64,000 bases of DNA from the sequence record MW812341.1. One strand, given 5' to 3'. This document shows, piece by piece, positions 24,849 to 30,781 of this stretch; position 1 is the stretch's first letter; the number at the start of each line of letters is the position of its first letter. Both the position numbers and the translations under genes were made by a program. The notes beneath the pieces are model-generated. The model saw nothing but the letters and a program-made list of their open reading frames with translations, was not told where the DNA came from and made no database searches.

Positions 24849-25262
24849 TTAGGTAATTTCACCCATCAAGACAATTTCGACACCATAACGTTCGCCGAGA
24901 GCTTGGAAGGTTTGGATAAGTAAATGACGGTGACAGAATTTGCCAGCCGGACAGAAACACATCAGGGCAATACGCCCAGCGTACAACAGCTCTAATAGAA
25001 CATCGGGTTCCGTTCGAAAGAGCTGCTTAATCTTCGCGCGGTACTTACGGGTATACACAGCCTCGGCCTCGGCGTCCTTATTGGAACTTTTATATTCCAT
25101 CAAGAAGTCCCAGGTCGGGGCTAATAATTTATTACCCGTCTTGACAGTGATATCAACCAGCCGGACTGACGGATGAATCTCCCACACTTTCCGCCACTTT
25201 GCCATCTGCACTGTCCAGATTTCCAGACGCGGCTTGGGCAGCGAGTCGCTCTTTTTCATCAC
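24849..25262 (-). CDS. DUF488-family protein
   Basis: LAPTWDFLMEYK..Y..Y and IALMCFCPAGKFCHRHLL motifs; GAGGGAG RBS; overlaps upstream gene by 110 nt. Confidence 0.65.
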   Translation of the reverse strand: MMKKSDSLPKPRLEIWTVQMAKWRKVWEIHPSVRLVDITVKTGNKLLAPTWDFLMEYKSSNKDAEAEAVYTRKYRAKIKQLFRTEPDVLLELLYAGRIALMCFCPAGKFCHRHLLIQTFQALGERYGVEIVLMGEIT

Positions 25263-26205
25263 GCTCCCTCAGATATTTTTTCAGCCGTGGGCGATAGTCT
25301 GCCCACTCTTCACGACTGTAAGCCTTAATGGACAGCGGCTCAGACTTCTCATTAAGAGATAACGCGCCAACCCAACCTTCCTTAACTTTAAACGCTTCGG
25401 GTGCTCTCATGATGCTATTTGGAACCCCTGGCCCCACACTGTCTTGCGGACAGGTGCTTTTCTGAATTCGATTCCAATAGGCTTCGTTGGTATTGATTCG
25501 CCAAGCGACAGACAATTCAATTCCCTTTTCACGGTAGCGAATATGTTTCGCTGAATTATCCAAGTTAATCTCGACGTAGAACATATCGAGTTCAGGGCAG
25601 TCGATAAACTCAATTGAATAATGAGAAGCCACCGTGACCAATTCACGAATATCTGCGGGTAGTTCTTTCCACATTTCGATTTTGGTTTTATCCCATGCTG
25701 GCGTTATCAGCGGATGCACACGTTGAGCATGGTCCTGGAAATAAATAAGACTTTCGTACATCTCACGCAAACGGACATAGTCGGCTTCACTGTATTCCCC
25801 GCGCGCAAAGTTACGTTCGATGCAATCACCTTTGTTCCACCCCACGTACGCAGTAATGGCATCGGAACCACGGCACAGTTCCTCGTTCATTACACTCGCC
25901 AAGGATAAGATAACGTTACCCTGCTGTACAAGACGGGCGGTGTAGTTACCGCGAATGTGATTGAAGATATTTGAGGCCGGTGTCCGCCAAGTCAGTTCAC
26001 GCTTATAGACTTCAGACTTCTTCAACATACGGAGCGCAGACTCACTACTCAGTAAATATTCTAAGAAGGCTGCGCGATACCCCTGATTGAAATCGAGATA
26101 TACCGGAAAGATAAATTCCGCTGGCATATCGTCCGACAAGTTCAACAACGTATTCATTACCCAGGTAGAATCTAAACCGCCGGTTAATGTCACAACTCTT
26201 CCCAT
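25153..26205 (-). CDS. QueC-like PP-loop ATP pyrophosphatase
   Basis: VVTLTGGLDST (SGGLDS-type PP-loop), YLDFNQG, PAWDKTKIEMW; lacks the QueC C-terminal Cys cluster. Confidence 0.6.
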   Translation of the reverse strand: MGRVVTLTGGLDSTWVMNTLLNLSDDMPAEFIFPVYLDFNQGYRAAFLEYLLSSESALRMLKKSEVYKRELTWRTPASNIFNHIRGNYTARLVQQGNVILSLASVMNEELCRGSDAITAYVGWNKGDCIERNFARGEYSEADYVRLREMYESLIYFQDHAQRVHPLITPAWDKTKIEMWKELPADIRELVTVASHYSIEFIDCPELDMFYVEINLDNSAKHIRYREKGIELSVAWRINTNEAYWNRIQKSTCPQDSVGPGVPNSIMRAPEAFKVKEGWVGALSLNEKSEPLSIKAYSREEWADYRPRLKKYLRERDEKERLAAQAASGNLDSADGKVAESVGDSSVSPAG

Positions 26206-26497: not shown

Positions 26498-26698
26498 TTA
26501 GAACAAGGTTTGTAATGGCGCGAGCTTAATGAATGCCCATTTGTGGATGTTCCACGCGATTATCGCGAAAACGAACGCCACAAACATCCCCATCAAGTCA
26601 CCCTTGAACAAATCCTTTACACCATCGATGACGCAATGGATAAGGTAATACCCGGCCAGTACCATCATTACCCAGTAGAACAGTTCTGATATGCTCAT
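26498..26698 (-). CDS. Small membrane protein, 2 TM (start MSISEL)
   Basis: Hydrophobic segments; ATGA overlap with upstream stop. Confidence 0.7.
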   Translation of the reverse strand: MSISELFYWVMMVLAGYYLIHCVIDGVKDLFKGDLMGMFVAFVFAIIAWNIHKWAFIKLAPLQTLF

Positions 26699-27168
26699 TC
26701 CGGTAACAAGTCCCAACAGATAACTTTATCAATCGCACCACCCGGCGTAGCCAGTGCACGCATCCCGAACGTAACGTTTTGATTACGACCATCCATCAAC
26801 TCGTTCACCGTACGGGCGTGTGGGCCAAACGGACGCAGCTCTGCCTTTACCGTCCCCTTCATCTTATCGTGACGAATGTTCTCGATAGACGCACACACGT
26901 TCTTTTGGTCAATGGTGCAGACCGCAGGAGCGTATTTATCGTCAGCCATCGGGATTTGGAAACGGTAGTCGTGATACGGATCAACTTCGCACAGAACACG
27001 AGGTTGGCGCACGATACCACGAATCAAATGTGCAATATCGCCGGTGTACTGGCGACCGTCTGTCGTCATGCGGGATGTGTCCAGCAACACAACACTGTAG
27101 AACTTACCGTTGTTGTCTTCGCCTTGTCCCGTGATTTGTAATCCGCGCAAGTCGTTATTCTTTTCCAT
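26695..27168 (-). CDS. Degenerate prohead protease (T4 gp21/phiKZ gp175-like) paralog, probably inactive
   Basis: VLCEVDP..IDQKNVCASI..V.AELRPFGP..NVTFGMRA..ICWD follows the GE..HP..VSH..GP.G..V.FS.R..TWD scaffold; start MEKNND. Confidence 0.55.
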   Translation of the reverse strand: MEKNNDLRGLQITGQGEDNNGKFYSVVLLDTSRMTTDGRQYTGDIAHLIRGIVRQPRVLCEVDPYHDYRFQIPMADDKYAPAVCTIDQKNVCASIENIRHDKMKGTVKAELRPFGPHARTVNELMDGRNQNVTFGMRALATPGGAIDKVICWDLLPE

Positions 27169-27193: not shown

Positions 27194-27544
27194 CTAACGA
27201 AAGATGCTGTAGTCGCGTTCTTGATAAGCAATCGGTACTTCCCCACGAGGGATATGGCACCACGCGTCGATATCTTCTGCAAAGAAACTATCCGGGCCGA
27301 ATTGATTCCACGCATATCCCTTTGTGTTATTACCCCATTCATCGCCGAAGGAAATGACACCTTTACGTGGGTCGTTAACCGGCAAGGCATCGCGCTCAGC
27401 TTGAGATAAACCACGGACGAGTTTAACCACCACCCACTCACAACCCTCCTGGTCAGTATCGACCCAAGTCCCGCGAGTATGATGCGCTAACACGTACGTC
27501 CCTTCATCAGGGAGTTCACCCTTTCCAGGATAGAAGATTTCCAT
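27194..27544 (-). CDS. Conserved phage hypothetical protein (start MEIFYP)
   Basis: DEWGNNTKGYAWNQFGPDSFF..W motif; GGGGGT RBS. Confidence 0.75.
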   Translation of the reverse strand: MEIFYPGKGELPDEGTYVLAHHTRGTWVDTDQEGCEWVVVKLVRGLSQAERDALPVNDPRKGVISFGDEWGNNTKGYAWNQFGPDSFFAEDIDAWCHIPRGEVPIAYQERDYSIFR

Positions 27545-27548
27545 GCTA

Positions 27549-28565
27549 CTACCCCCCAAGTTTTTCTAAGTGAGCGATACCATCGGCAAGGGCAGTTGAT
27601 AGTGCACGATCTTTACCGATGAAGTTTTCAGACTGGGCAGCCGAGCTGATGCGTACATACCAGGTATCTGACACGTCATTGTAGTTAAGGCTGAAACCGA
27701 CCTCACGCTGTTTACAAAGCGCTTTCAGTCGTGTCATGTCACCGATGAACAGAACGTGGGACATGTCATTATAGAAGCGGCTACCCACATCGTCCTCCGT
27801 GATACCCAGATGGTCGAATGCTTCTTCAACCGTATTAGATAAGGAACAATCGCCCGTCCTGAACCAATGCTCATGCTCCATTGGACGAATGCTGAAGTTC
27901 CACATATCGTCGCCTTCTTCGTAATTCAAAGAATAGTCCAGACCATCTTCTTTGCAGCGCTCATGGATTAAACCGTGCGCTTTTACGAAGTCTGGGTGGG
28001 TTGGTGTGTTATACGCAGTTTGACGTTCACGTCCCACTAACTCCCAGTTATCCGGCAGCACCACATCCCAACCTGGCACGCCGGTAATCTTACCTTGCTC
28101 GTCAGTAAGTACCCGTGCTCGCAAAGTGATGTGTGGCACCACCTTCATGTAACGGCGTAACTTCTCGCCCTTTGGCCCAGTAGGGAAGAAATAGGTTTCG
28201 AGTATCACCTCATCGGTAAGCGCATGGAGATGCCCGTCGCGCAGCGCGCCACAAACATCATGTTCGTCGACGCGACGGTAGCTTTGAAGCGCCATCGGAT
28301 TGGTGAAGGGTGCTGTACCTTTCACGGGACTCGCGGTGACCATCGCCGCCGCATTTATCCAACGATGGAAAACCTTTCCGATATCAGCATCCGCTGCGAA
28401 CAAGCCATTGGCTGCTTTGAAAGCCAACCCGCGACCATACACCGTTTCTGTTTTCGTGGAAGTAGCACCGTTGGTGTGTTCTTTCACTTCAACCACTACA
28501 TCAAAAACGTAATCAATCACTAATTCTGCGGAGGGTTGCTCCGGTAACATCGTATCCGTGTTCAA
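27549..28565 (-). CDS. Hypothetical protein with duplicated C-terminal ~60-aa domain
   Basis: CKEDGLDYSLNY..W.FSI versus CKQREVGFSLNY..W.VRI. Confidence 0.75.
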   Translation of the reverse strand: MNTDTMLPEQPSAELVIDYVFDVVVEVKEHTNGATSTKTETVYGRGLAFKAANGLFAADADIGKVFHRWINAAAMVTASPVKGTAPFTNPMALQSYRRVDEHDVCGALRDGHLHALTDEVILETYFFPTGPKGEKLRRYMKVVPHITLRARVLTDEQGKITGVPGWDVVLPDNWELVGRERQTAYNTPTHPDFVKAHGLIHERCKEDGLDYSLNYEEGDDMWNFSIRPMEHEHWFRTGDCSLSNTVEEAFDHLGITEDDVGSRFYNDMSHVLFIGDMTRLKALCKQREVGFSLNYNDVSDTWYVRISSAAQSENFIGKDRALSTALADGIAHLEKLGG

Positions 28566-30255
28566 GATATTTCTCCGGTTCGTAAAGTGCGGCCTGGAAG
28601 ATGCGTTCTACTATTGCGTCTAAACGACGAGCACCCAGGTTGTTCTCCCGATTGGCTTCAATCGTCTGCTCGGCAATGTATGCGTAGGTGTCTTTGTCGT
28701 ACAACACCTTCACACCTTCTAAGGACAACAGTTTAATCATGCCGTGGAAGTCACTGCTGTCCAAACGACAGATAGCTTCAAGGGCGTCTTTATCCAGTGG
28801 CTCTAAGTTCGCCCTTAACGGGAAACGCCCTTGGAGTTCTGGAAGGAGTTTAGAAAGAGGCGCTTCAGCAAACGTCCCAGCAGCGACAAAAAGCACGTTG
28901 GTTGTATCGATGGCACCGTATAACCCTCCTTCGACCATTTTCAACAGACTACGTTGCACACCACTGCGGGATACCTGGGCATGATTCGCACGTTCAGATT
29001 CAACCAGCTTATCAAACTCGTCCAGGAACACCACAGCGAAGTTCTCAATGAAGTCACGCCCATTACAGTTGTCAACCTTCAGCAAATCCTTCTTGCTAAT
29101 GACGCCGGTTTTGTGGGAGAACTCTGGTTTCGCTTTCGGAATATCAAACGTCCAAAGTTTCTCATCAGCAAAACGGGTGAAGTCTTCAACTGACCAGAAC
29201 TCTTCCATCATCGCTTCGTATTCGAATGCAATTTGGAATATCCAGTGCAGCAGATGTCCGGTAGAGTCGCTATACTTCCAGAGAATCCCAGGCGGGATGT
29301 CCTGCTTCTCACCGTCGAGCGTATACGCTGCATCGTACCAATCACCGCCAGAGACACAGGCTGCAACTGGATTGCTGCCCATTAACTCCAGGCCACGCTC
29401 CATGTACATCTCGAGCGTGTTCGCCATCCCCATCAAGCCCATGACATCTGCCATGAATTCCGGCTTCTCCTCGATGGCCGATTCGAGATCCATGTCCTCC
29501 ATCGCATCTGCATCCAAGTCACGCATTCCGGTGATGTCTCTACCGAGCACACCTTCCAACAGACTAAGAACTTTACGCACAATGACCTGAACCGTCTGAC
29601 CGGGCATCAGTTCCAACGTTCGGATGTCGAAGTCGTCGTACGGAACACCTTGGATATTGGAATAACCCAGCAGCATGGCACGCAGATAGAAGATACGCTG
29701 AATCTGCGCGTATTCAGCATCGCCAGGTAAGATACCCATGCTTTGCAATTGCAGTGTGTGCTTTTGCTTAGCTTCACGAAGTGCACGACGCTCTGTGTCT
29801 TCTTCCTGCTTCTCCGCTTCGTACTCTTTACGTTGGAGAGCATCCCATTCTTGGCGAGTGTAACGCGCTTCGTCCTTTTTCACTTCCATCCCAGTACGCA
29901 GTTTCACATACCAGTCCGGTAATGAGGTTGCTCGTACCAGTTCTGACAAGTCTGCACCGATGGTGTTAACGTTGCGTCCAACGTAACCTGTCTCGGAGAA
30001 ACCCGTCATGTCCAGTTCGAGTACCGGTAAACCAAAGCGTTGACGTAGGACACGCATCAAAGCCGTCTTGCCCGAACCCGTCGGGCCAATTAGCAGAAGG
30101 TTCTGCTTCTTCACGCTGCCACGGTCACGTAAGCCTAGAGAGGCTACACGAAAGCGGTTACGTAAAGCAATCGCCAACATCTTCTTTGCCATGTGTTGCC
30201 CGTGGACAAACTGGTCAAAGACTTTGACGATTTCAACAGGAGTTAGATTGTCCAT
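28513..30255 (-). CDS. hslU: HslU (ClpY)-like AAA+ ATPase with enlarged insertion domain
   Basis: LTP.EIV..GQ..AK..LAIALRNR; Walker A GPTGSGKT; pore loop GYVG; Walker B VFLDEFDK; GVQR.LL..VEG; PELQGRFP; NLGARRL. Confidence 0.9.
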   Translation of the reverse strand: MDNLTPVEIVKVFDQFVHGQHMAKKMLAIALRNRFRVASLGLRDRGSVKKQNLLLIGPTGSGKTALMRVLRQRFGLPVLELDMTGFSETGYVGRNVNTIGADLSELVRATSLPDWYVKLRTGMEVKKDEARYTRQEWDALQRKEYEAEKQEEDTERRALREAKQKHTLQLQSMGILPGDAEYAQIQRIFYLRAMLLGYSNIQGVPYDDFDIRTLELMPGQTVQVIVRKVLSLLEGVLGRDITGMRDLDADAMEDMDLESAIEEKPEFMADVMGLMGMANTLEMYMERGLELMGSNPVAACVSGGDWYDAAYTLDGEKQDIPPGILWKYSDSTGHLLHWIFQIAFEYEAMMEEFWSVEDFTRFADEKLWTFDIPKAKPEFSHKTGVISKKDLLKVDNCNGRDFIENFAVVFLDEFDKLVESERANHAQVSRSGVQRSLLKMVEGGLYGAIDTTNVLFVAAGTFAEAPLSKLLPELQGRFPLRANLEPLDKDALEAICRLDSSDFHGMIKLLSLEGVKVLYDKDTYAYIAEQTIEANRENNLGARRLDAIVERIFQAALYEPEKYLEHGYDVTGATLRRISD

Positions 30256-30781
30256 AGCGCACCATCAGCATGTTTTGTTGGACGTCGGTCATACCCACGA
30301 CCCGACCGATTAGTTTATCGAACTCTTCACAGACGAGGGAGATGTAACACGCTCGTTCCCCTTGTGGGGTAGTGAAGTCCGCGAGTTCAACCTCAGGCAT
30401 TGTATCCAGCCCACCGACGACATACACGTTAATCCGCATCATGTCGAGACTTGCGACCAGTTCGTTCAAATCGTACGGTTCGAGGTTGCCTTGAAAAGAC
30501 CGAGAGAACTGCACCGCGTTACGACTGAATACACGGTCACAGATTTCCGCCGTTAGTTCTTTGCGTTCTTTCTCCGGTAAAGCTGGGAGAATATTACAAC
30601 GCAGTGCATCGGTCGACATCATGAAGTACAACTCACGCGGGGTAAGATTCATCGAATCAGCTAACGCGATGATATCATGATTCCCTGCATCGAAGTATTC
30701 TTCGACGGCTTTCTCGATGGGTGAGAAGTCAATCTTACGCTCCTTCACCCACAGCTGTTTAAAGCGTTTCCAGAAGTTCAT
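30233..30781 (-). CDS. Hypothetical protein
   Basis: 182-aa ORF coupled to both neighbours. Confidence 0.75.
   Translation of the reverse strand: MNFWKRFKQLWVKERKIDFSPIEKAVEEYFDAGNHDIIALADSMNLTPRELYFMMSTDALRCNILPALPEKERKELTAEICDRVFSRNAVQFSRSFQGNLEPYDLNELVASLDMMRINVYVVGGLDTMPEVELADFTTPQGERACYISLVCEEFDKLIGRVVGMTDVQQNMLMVRYGQSNSC

What the first reader, a model, noticed from the sequence alone, without database searches (positions are those of the whole stretch)
28513..30255. Rewired HslU: ~295-aa novel insertion domain and no HslV-activating tail
All motor motifs are intact (Walker A/B, GYVG pore loop, GRFP arginine finger). Residues ~105-400 replace the ~130-aa bacterial I-domain with a longer acidic helical insert. 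The C-terminus ends ..TLRRISD rather than the conserved ..L(S/R)(R/K)(F/Y)IL tail that docks into and activates HslV (established for bacterial HslU). No hslV is in the window. Inference: a protease-independent unfoldase/remodeller with phage-specific substrate selection, or a dominant-negative poison of host HslUV.
Basis: partly seen in the sequence, partly recalled or inferred. Interest (0 to 1): 0.65.

Follow-up and report, generated by a model that had tools for sequence, protein, structure and literature searches.

The report
Tail-less phage HslU with novel insert
A giant Erwinia phage encodes an HslU-type protein-unfolding motor that has swapped its substrate-binding domain for a larger, unrelated helical domain and lost the tail that normally couples it to a protease, so it most likely works alone as a protein remodeller; the gene family was already annotated, but these features had not been described.

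Summary
The ORF is real: window 28513-30255 (-), 580 aa, pEaSNUABM9_00247 of Erwinia jumbo phage pEa_SNUABM_9 (Machinavirus, Chimalliviridae). The motor is HslU-type, with Walker A/B, GYVG, arginine finger and sensor-2 intact.

Residues 106-399 sit exactly at the I-domain site. They form an acidic, confidently modelled all-helical domain with no sequence or fold relative outside this phage family, in 1.84 billion cluster representatives, PDB and BFVD.

All family members end about 14-20 residues early and lack the LSRYIL-type HslV-activating tail. There is no ClpX-type IGF-loop insertion either.

Its distribution is uncoupled from the ATPase. SPN3US and phiEaH2 keep the peptidase only; Kwan keeps the ATPase only.

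My best reading is a peptidase-independent unfoldase/remodeller with a fast-evolving specificity domain (confidence 0.55). A non-canonical pairing with the phage peptidase remains open (0.2). Poisoning or use of host HslV is unlikely.

This is a new variant of a known kind, of moderate interest.

The parts
28513..30255 (-). HslU-clade AAA+ ATPase gene (580 aa, pEaSNUABM9_00247; phrog_4339)
   Evidence: AF2 model pLDDT 84.6; VIA Z 29.5 to HslU 1g41 against 25.5 to ClpX
29941..30255 (-). N-terminal part of the AAA+ large domain (res 1-105), with Walker A (30064-30087) and the GYVG pore-1 loop (29977-29988)
29059..29940 (-). Lineage-specific insert (res 106-399) at the I-domain site: acidic, all-helical, with a long helical hairpin (about 134-202) plus a helical bundle; conserved LPDWY motif at 112-116
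   Evidence: insert-only AF2 model pLDDT 81.3, pTM 0.68; no PDB/BFVD fold match; no sequence relatives outside the family; pI 4.66
28516..29058 (-). C-terminal part of the AAA+ large domain plus the small domain (res 400-580): Walker B 29008-29034, arginine finger 28819-28839, sensor-2 28621-28635. It ends in the conserved YD(I/V)TGxTLR motif plus a few variable residues (28516-28554) and has no HslV-activating tail
30233..30781 (-). Upstream gene (182 aa, phrog_11712) overlapping the ATPase start by 23 nt; homologues sit directly upstream of the ATPase in both the Machina-like and Kwan-like clades; candidate cofactor or adaptor
   Evidence: the only lead on its nature is a weak sigma-70-like feature score of 0.86-0.87
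27549..28565 (-). Downstream gene (338 aa, phrog_24315 + phrog_31164) overlapping the ATPase 3' end by up to 53 nt; contains a partial S80-protease-like segment and an internally duplicated ~74-aa module; its position varies among relatives
26695..27168 (-). 157-aa paralogue of the S80 prohead protease (context only); found 0-3 genes downstream of the ATPase in the Machina-like clade only; Gly replaces the Ser of the true protease's FS(L)RA motif

Best explanation
The gene encodes a hexameric HslU-clade AAA+ unfoldase that works without a docked peptidase. Shown: it has a complete ATP-hydrolysis and translocation apparatus (Walker A/B, GYVG pore loop, arginine finger, sensor-2). Shown: the I-domain is replaced by an unrelated 294-aa acidic helical domain that evolves much faster than the motor. 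Shown: both known peptidase-docking devices of this clade are absent, namely the HslU C-terminal tail and the ClpX IGF loop. Inferred: six copies of the insert form the substrate or adaptor entry structure on the face where HslU carries its I-domains. They would select phage-specific clients, which are then unfolded or stripped from complexes and released rather than degraded. Precedents, from my own knowledge, are ClpX with MuA and HslU alone acting on SulA. Inferred, weaker: the conserved overlapping upstream gene is a cofactor, and the site of action may be the phage nucleus, as reported for the distant homologue RAY gp116.
For: The motor is intact and HslU-like. The tail is absent in every family member, whereas all but two or three of 87 bacterial HslU hits end in an LSRYIL-type motif. 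The tail, its aromatic residue and the C-terminal octapeptide are what activate HslV (PMC4106860; PMC6429459 abstract). The segment between GTF and ELQGR is 10 residues, as in HslU, so there is no IGF-loop insertion. No canonical HslV or ClpP is detected anywhere in the phage genome. The phage HslV-like gene and the ATPase gene dissociate in both directions: SPN3US and phiEaH2 have the peptidase only, and Kwan has the ATPase only. The insert is confidently folded yet has no relatives. It diverges far faster than the motor, 19-50% against 59-81% identity, as expected for a specificity module. There is a precedent for an HslU paralogue that does not activate HslV: T. brucei HslU1 (PMC4106860). 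[quoted passage not shown]
Against: The same genome encodes an HslV-family peptidase with catalytic residues conserved. At least 18 of 27 phages with the ATPase also carry it, and in CR5 the two genes are 2.3 kb apart. The conserved C-terminal YD(I/V)TGxTLR motif could be a new docking element. There is no biochemical, expression or interaction evidence: no RNA runs were found and complex prediction was not possible. The nuclear localisation comes from a homologue sharing only about 33% identity over the motor and carrying a different insert.
Confidence: 0.55

Rival explanations
1. It is the ATPase cap of a phage-encoded HslUV-like protease. It would dock on the phage's own diverged HslV/proteasome-family peptidase (pEaSNUABM9_00092) through a non-canonical interface and feed it substrates selected by the insert.
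For: The phage peptidase matches phrog_1040 at E 3e-36, and that profile rings in exactly the HslV/proteasome-bearing control genomes. It starts MTTIA and keeps the Asp, Lys and GSG positions of Salmonella HslV. Most phages with the ATPase also have it. In CR5 the two genes lie in one block, 2.3 kb apart. The conserved YD(I/V)TGxTLR C-terminal motif might replace the tail.
Against: In this genome the genes are about 109 kb apart. They dissociate in both directions: more than 20 SPN3US- and phiEaH2-like phages keep the peptidase without the ATPase, and the Kwan clade keeps the ATPase without the peptidase. The peptidase position aligned with HslV Lys28 is Gly or Ser; my recollection, not tested here, is that Lys28 binds the tail carboxylate. 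Phage proteasome homologues (PPH/AAH) have no known unfoldase partner (PMC8665760).
Confidence: 0.2
2. It acts on the host HslUV system. Either it activates host HslV like canonical HslU, or it poisons the system by capping HslV or co-assembling with host HslU.
For: The only support is general homology of the AAA+ core, about 33-38% identity to bacterial HslU.
Against: The C-terminal tail that mediates HslV binding and activation is absent (PMC4106860). The proline aligned with E. coli Pro315 is shifted by one position. The gene is dispensable in close relatives (SPN3US lacks it; JN03 keeps only a 73-codon remnant). If the protein is nuclear like RAY gp116, it would be separated from host HslV.
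Confidence: 0.05
3. It pairs with the neighbouring S80 prohead-protease paralogues (26695-27168 and part of 27549-28565) as an unconventional ATPase-protease module.
For: An S80 paralogue lies 0-3 genes downstream in the Machina-like clade.
Against: The paralogues have Gly where the true protease has Ser in the FS(L)RA motif, so they are probably inactive. The adjacency is lost in relatives at 59%, 50% and about 41-43% identity. S80-type proteases are not known to dock AAA+ rings (my own knowledge).
Confidence: 0.04

Closest known systems
Bacterial HslU (ClpY), e.g. E. coli / H. influenzae (PDB 1g41, 1do0, 1g3i)
   Same: Same AAA+ clade and fold (VIA Z 29.5, 33% identity over about 310 residues). 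GYVG is at the same residue numbers, and Walker A/B, arginine finger and sensor-2 are present. A domain is inserted at the same point in the large domain.
   Different: The insert is 294 aa rather than about 134 aa and is unrelated in sequence and fold. The C-terminus lacks the DLSRYIL-type tail. There is a 4-residue deletion in the EGSTVxTKYG hairpin. The score is below the NCBIfam HslU cut-off, 210.6 against 362.45. No adjacent hslV.
ClpX
   Same: Sister AAA+ unfoldase (VIA Z about 25; NCBIfam 136 bits), and a precedent for protease-independent remodelling.
   Different: No N-terminal zinc-binding domain matched and no IGF-loop insertion. The phage has no ClpP.
Erwinia phage RAY gp116 (Agricanvirus), 'HslUV-family' accessory protein
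   Same: A phage-encoded, tail-less HslU/ClpX-clade ATPase in a Chimalliviridae phage, with a large insert at the same site. [quoted passage not shown]
   Different: Only about 33% identity over 45% of the query. It has a different insert, a GYYG pore loop and a long hairpin retained. Orthology is not established.
Trypanosoma brucei HslU1
   Same: A natural HslU paralogue reported not to activate HslV (PMC4106860).
   Different: It is eukaryotic and mitochondrial, and retains a C-terminal tail with the conserved aromatic residue. It was not compared here by sequence.
Phage proteasome homologues PPH/AAH (Fuchs et al. 2021)
   Same: The genome's HslV-like gene is a short phage-borne Ntn-hydrolase of the HslV/BPH-related group. 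No unfoldase partner is known for these (PMC8665760).
   Different: I did not test which subgroup pEaSNUABM9_00092 belongs to. It is not part of the window.

Membership tests
HslU (NCBIfam TIGR00390 equivalog) | Whole-protein score at or above the curated cut-off | tested here: not met
   210.6 bits against a cut-off of 362.45, matched in two stretches only
HslU (NCBIfam TIGR00390 equivalog) | ClpX/HslU-clade AAA+ core with Walker A/B, GYVG pore-1 loop, arginine finger and sensor-2 | tested here: met
   Motifs present and invariant in alignment A1; fold Z 29.5 to HslU
HslU (NCBIfam TIGR00390 equivalog) | Homologous I-domain (E. coli 110-243) inserted in the large domain | tested here: not met
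   An insert is present at the same site, but hhalign gives probability 0.2%, no HslU chain appears among the fold matches of the insert-only model, and the PDB profile search is empty
HslU (NCBIfam TIGR00390 equivalog) | C-terminal HslV-activating tail (..DLS(R/K)(Y/F)IL) | tested here: not met
   The protein ends in RRISD. The whole phage family ends about 14-20 residues short of bacterial HslU, or carries unrelated K/E-rich extensions
HslU (NCBIfam TIGR00390 equivalog) | Functional pairing with HslV (operon partner, activation) | not testable with these tools
   There is no adjacent hslV. A diverged HslV-family gene lies 109 kb away and its distribution is uncoupled from the ATPase.
ClpX | IGF loop for ClpP docking and N-terminal zinc-binding domain | tested here: not met
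   The 10-residue GTF-to-ELQGR segment is as in HslU, with no insertion. There is no zf-C4_ClpX hit in Pfam and no ClpP in the genome
phrog_4339 (jumbo-phage HslU-like ATPases, function unknown) | Full-length profile match | tested here: met
   E 2.5e-189, residues 1-578 on profile positions 2-529 of 552

The most novel reading that the evidence does not exclude
The ATPase is an unfoldase dedicated to the phage nucleus. Using its lineage-specific insert, and perhaps the conserved upstream gene product, it would thread selected proteins across the chimallin shell, or strip them from complexes at or inside the shell. That would supply the 'unfoldase' option left open for nuclear protein import in Chimalliviridae.
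Probability: 0.08. Interest if true: 0.85.

Novelty: new variant of a known kind. Interest (0 to 1): 0.5.

Why it matters
HslU is a textbook model of how an AAA+ unfoldase is coupled to a peptidase through its C-terminal tail and chooses substrates through its I-domain. This phage clade provides a natural experiment: the tail is deleted and the I-domain is replaced by a fast-evolving domain with no known fold, while the motor stays under strong constraint.

If the protein works alone, it adds a phage-encoded, protease-free unfoldase to the toolkit of nucleus-forming jumbo phages. In those phages, how proteins are remodelled or moved across the shell is unresolved.

If instead it docks on the phage's own proteasome homologue, that would be the first unfoldase partner for the phage PPH/AAH-type proteasome homologues, and a new docking mode.

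Either outcome can be tested with standard biochemistry. The gene is accessory, having been lost in SPN3US, so it is likely to be conditional, for example host- or defence-specific, rather than essential.

Tried and rejected
- **Canonical hslV, proteasome and ClpP profiles (TIGR03692, PF00227, PF00574) on the whole phage record:** nothing at E<=10. This was misleading for HslV. The PHROG profile phrog_1040 found a diverged homologue, which scores only E 1.7 against TIGR03692 when scanned directly and has no phmmer hit in PDB.
- **Complex prediction, ATPase plus two copies of the phage HslV-like protein:** I did not send it elsewhere afterwards. The second try, ATPase plus the upstream gene product, returned 'tool not available'. 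No interaction test was therefore made.
- **Chimallin search with RAY gp222 against the phage record:** no hit. This is uninformative, so I relied on the taxonomy instead: Machinavirus is in Chimalliviridae.
- **ESM Atlas on the insert:** no usable hit.
- **IMG/VR scan:** only ChrisDB is a close relative; the rest are short ClpX-like genes.
- **Sequencing-run search:** no run holds more than 9% of the words, and none is recorded as RNA.
- **S80-paralogue partner idea:** rejected, because the synteny is lost in relatives and Gly replaces the Ser of the true protease's FS(L)RA motif.
- **PMC124242 (Ramachandran 2002):** not held. The role of the tail is cited from PMC4106860 instead.
Full report
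**Identity and observation**

The window is the last 64 kb of Erwinia phage pEa_SNUABM_9 (MW812341.1, 247,273 bp; genus Machinavirus, family Chimalliviridae). The reported ORF, 28513-30255 on the minus strand, encodes 580 aa. GenBank annotates it as pEaSNUABM9_00247, 'hypothetical protein'.

- Pfam sees only split AAA_2/AAA hits.
- NCBIfam's HslU equivalog matches in two stretches at 210.6 bits, below its 362.45 cut-off. ClpX follows at 136 bits.
- Solved HslU chains match residues 1-105 and about 400-560 at E about 1e-46. Residues 106-399 are unmatched.
- The full-length AlphaFold2 model (pLDDT 84.6) superposes on HslU at Z 29.5 and on ClpX at about 25.

**The insert**

The insert lies at the E. 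coli I-domain site (I-domain 110-243; PMC10743992), but it is 294 aa long, acidic (pI 4.66, net charge -20) and all-helical. To test whether it is simply an enlarged I-domain, I fetched eleven homologous loci. I aligned residues 102-404 alone (A2) and modelled that piece (pLDDT 81.3, pTM 0.68).

| Test of the insert | Result |
|---|---|
| hhalign, insert profile vs 28 bacterial HslU | probability 0.2% |
| hmmsearch vs PDB sequences | nothing at E<=10 |
| Foldseek vs PDB | best E 1.6 |
| VIA-align vs 48,161 PDB representatives | best Z 5.8, one long helix only; no HslU chain listed |
| Foldseek vs BFVD | only the family's own entry |
| HMMER profile vs 1.84 billion cluster representatives | two hits, both family members (Machina-like P0009, Kwan-like P0026) |

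Within the family the motor is 59-81% identical to the query where the insert is only 19-50%. In the Phobos/CR5 lineage the insert is larger still (677-730-aa proteins) and shares only a few short motifs. This is a conserved engine carrying a rapidly changing accessory domain.

**Docking elements**

All but two or three of 87 bacterial HslU hits end in an LSRYIL-type motif. Every phage-family member instead ends at a conserved YD(I/V)TGxTLR motif plus a few variable residues, or carries an unrelated K/E-rich extension. The tail, its aromatic residue and the C-terminal octapeptide are what bind and activate HslV (PMC4106860; PMC6429459).

The stretch between GTF and ELQGR is ten residues, as in HslU, so no ClpX-type IGF loop is inserted there. 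The placement of the IGF loop in ClpX is from my own knowledge. The family also has a four-residue deletion in the hairpin that corresponds to ClpX's RKH loop.

**Is there a peptidase partner?**

Canonical profiles for HslV, proteasome and ClpP find nothing in the 247-kb record. However, CR5's annotation 'peptidase HslV family' led me to phrog_1040. That profile rings in the same nine control genomes as the HslV model TIGR03692. It hits this phage at E 3e-36 (record 73250-73756; pEaSNUABM9_00092, 171 aa).

The protein starts MTTIA. It keeps the Asp, Lys and GSG positions that align with Asp17, Lys33 and the GSG motif of Salmonella HslV. It is therefore probably an active Ntn peptidase of the phage proteasome-homologue kind, for which no unfoldase partner is known (PMC8665760).

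It lies about 109 kb from the ATPase gene and outside the window.

**Distribution of the two genes**

| Pattern | Phages |
|---|---|
| Both genes | at least 18 (Machina-like, ChrisDB, Caitlin, SPAsTU, some SPN3US-like), plus CR5, where they are 2.3 kb apart |
| Peptidase only | SPN3US and phiEaH2 (checked directly), and about 20 further SPN3US-like and Erskinevirus records |
| ATPase only | Kwan (no phrog_1040 match); Wellington and pEa_SNUABM_11 show no tblastn hit |

JN03 retains only a 73-codon N-terminal remnant of the ATPase gene. Neither gene therefore depends on the other. The ATPase is accessory, which matches the classification of RAY gp116 (PMC10299810).

**Context**

The gene sits in a long minus-strand run of overlapping ORFs of unknown function.

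- The 182-aa upstream gene (30233-30781, phrog_11712) overlaps the ATPase start by 23 nt. It has homologues directly upstream of the ATPase in both the Machina-like and the Kwan-like clades, which makes it the best candidate for a cofactor. Its only functional lead is a sub-threshold sigma-70-like feature score.
- The downstream 338-aa gene and a 157-aa S80 prohead-protease paralogue are variably present. The paralogues carry Gly where the genuine protease (record 94338-95033) has Ser in its FS(L)RA motif. I do not regard them as a peptidase partner.

**Mechanism**

I commit to a peptidase-independent hexameric unfoldase/remodeller whose insert, possibly with the upstream gene product, selects clients (confidence 0.55).

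- Shown: an intact motor, a new insert, loss of both docking devices, and uncoupled inheritance from the phage peptidase.
- Inferred: hexamer formation, the arrangement of the inserts over the pore, and release rather than degradation of clients.
- Site of action: it may be the phage nucleus. RAY gp116, a distant tail-less homologue with a different insert, co-localises with phage DNA (PMC10299810). A preprint on nuclear import explicitly leaves open an unfoldase that threads cargo through the lattice (10.1101/2024.03.27.586873). I give that specific role a probability of only about 0.08.

Rivals:

| Rival reading | Confidence |
|---|---|
| Non-canonical docking on the phage HslV-like peptidase | 0.2 |
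| Action on host HslV or HslU | 0.05 |
| Pairing with the S80 paralogues | 0.04 |

**Limits**

- There is no expression evidence.
I found it after my own tests and do not count it as independent support.

**Verdict**

This is a new variant of a known kind: an HslU-clade ATPase, already annotated as HslU-like in relatives, whose replaced I-domain and missing tail had not been described. Interest is moderate, at 0.5.

Noticed in passing
outside the window: MW812341.1 73238-73753 (-) = L005:1489-2004 (-): pEaSNUABM9_00092, annotated 'hypothetical', is a diverged HslV/proteasome-family Ntn peptidase (phrog_1040, E 3e-36). It starts MTTIA and keeps the Asp, Lys and GSG positions. It sits at the edge of a cluster of about 17 tRNA genes. 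Canonical HslV and proteasome profiles miss it.
   Followed up: partly
window 30233-30781 (-): This 182-aa gene (phrog_11712) overlaps the ATPase start by 23 nt and is conserved directly upstream of the ATPase in the Machina- and Kwan-like clades. The ESM Atlas gives only a weak sigma-70 r2/ECF-like lead (0.86-0.87, below the 0.9 level).
   Followed up: partly
window 27549-28565 (-): This 338-aa protein has an internal duplication of a ~74-aa C-terminal module (about res 185-253 and 264-337; the module occurs once in CR5_124). It also has a partial match to the S80-paralogue family phrog_7478 at res 92-169.
   Followed up: partly
window 26695-27168 (-): This 157-aa S80 prohead-protease paralogue and its homologues in three relatives have Gly where the genuine protease (record 94338-95033) has Ser in the FS(L)RA motif, plus a 3-residue insertion next to the conserved His.
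   Followed up: partly
MT799840.1 (Salmonella phage JN03) 105688-105906; NC_027402.1 (SPN3US): SPN3US-type phages lack the ATPase gene. JN03 keeps an unannotated remnant of codons 1-73 (64% identity), which indicates recent deletion within a genus where SPLA3, MET_P1_082_240 and phage 1252 still carry the full gene.
   Followed up: partly
MT710307.1 (pSal-SNUABM-04) 106144-107874: The orthologue (56% identity, full length) is annotated 'putative DnaA protein'. The published description says HslV is encoded at ORFs 1 and 116 and that no HslU is present (PMC7823757). By its position in the genome ORF 116 may be this HslU-like gene, so the annotation looks wrong; I did not check the ORF numbering.
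   Followed up: no
window 25153-26205 (-) and 27194-27559 (-); L090-L100: A QueC-like 350-aa gene and a DUF488-N3a gene travel with the ATPase block in nearly all relatives, though their order differs. In Kwan-like phages the QueC-like gene is upstream of the ATPase.
   Followed up: no
P0027-P0032 (Phobos/CR5/Derbicus lineage): These HslU-like ATPases are 677-730 aa, with inserts of about 400-450 aa and, in some, Gly/Met-rich low-complexity linkers. The pore loop reads GYHG or GYQG instead of GYVG.
   Followed up: no
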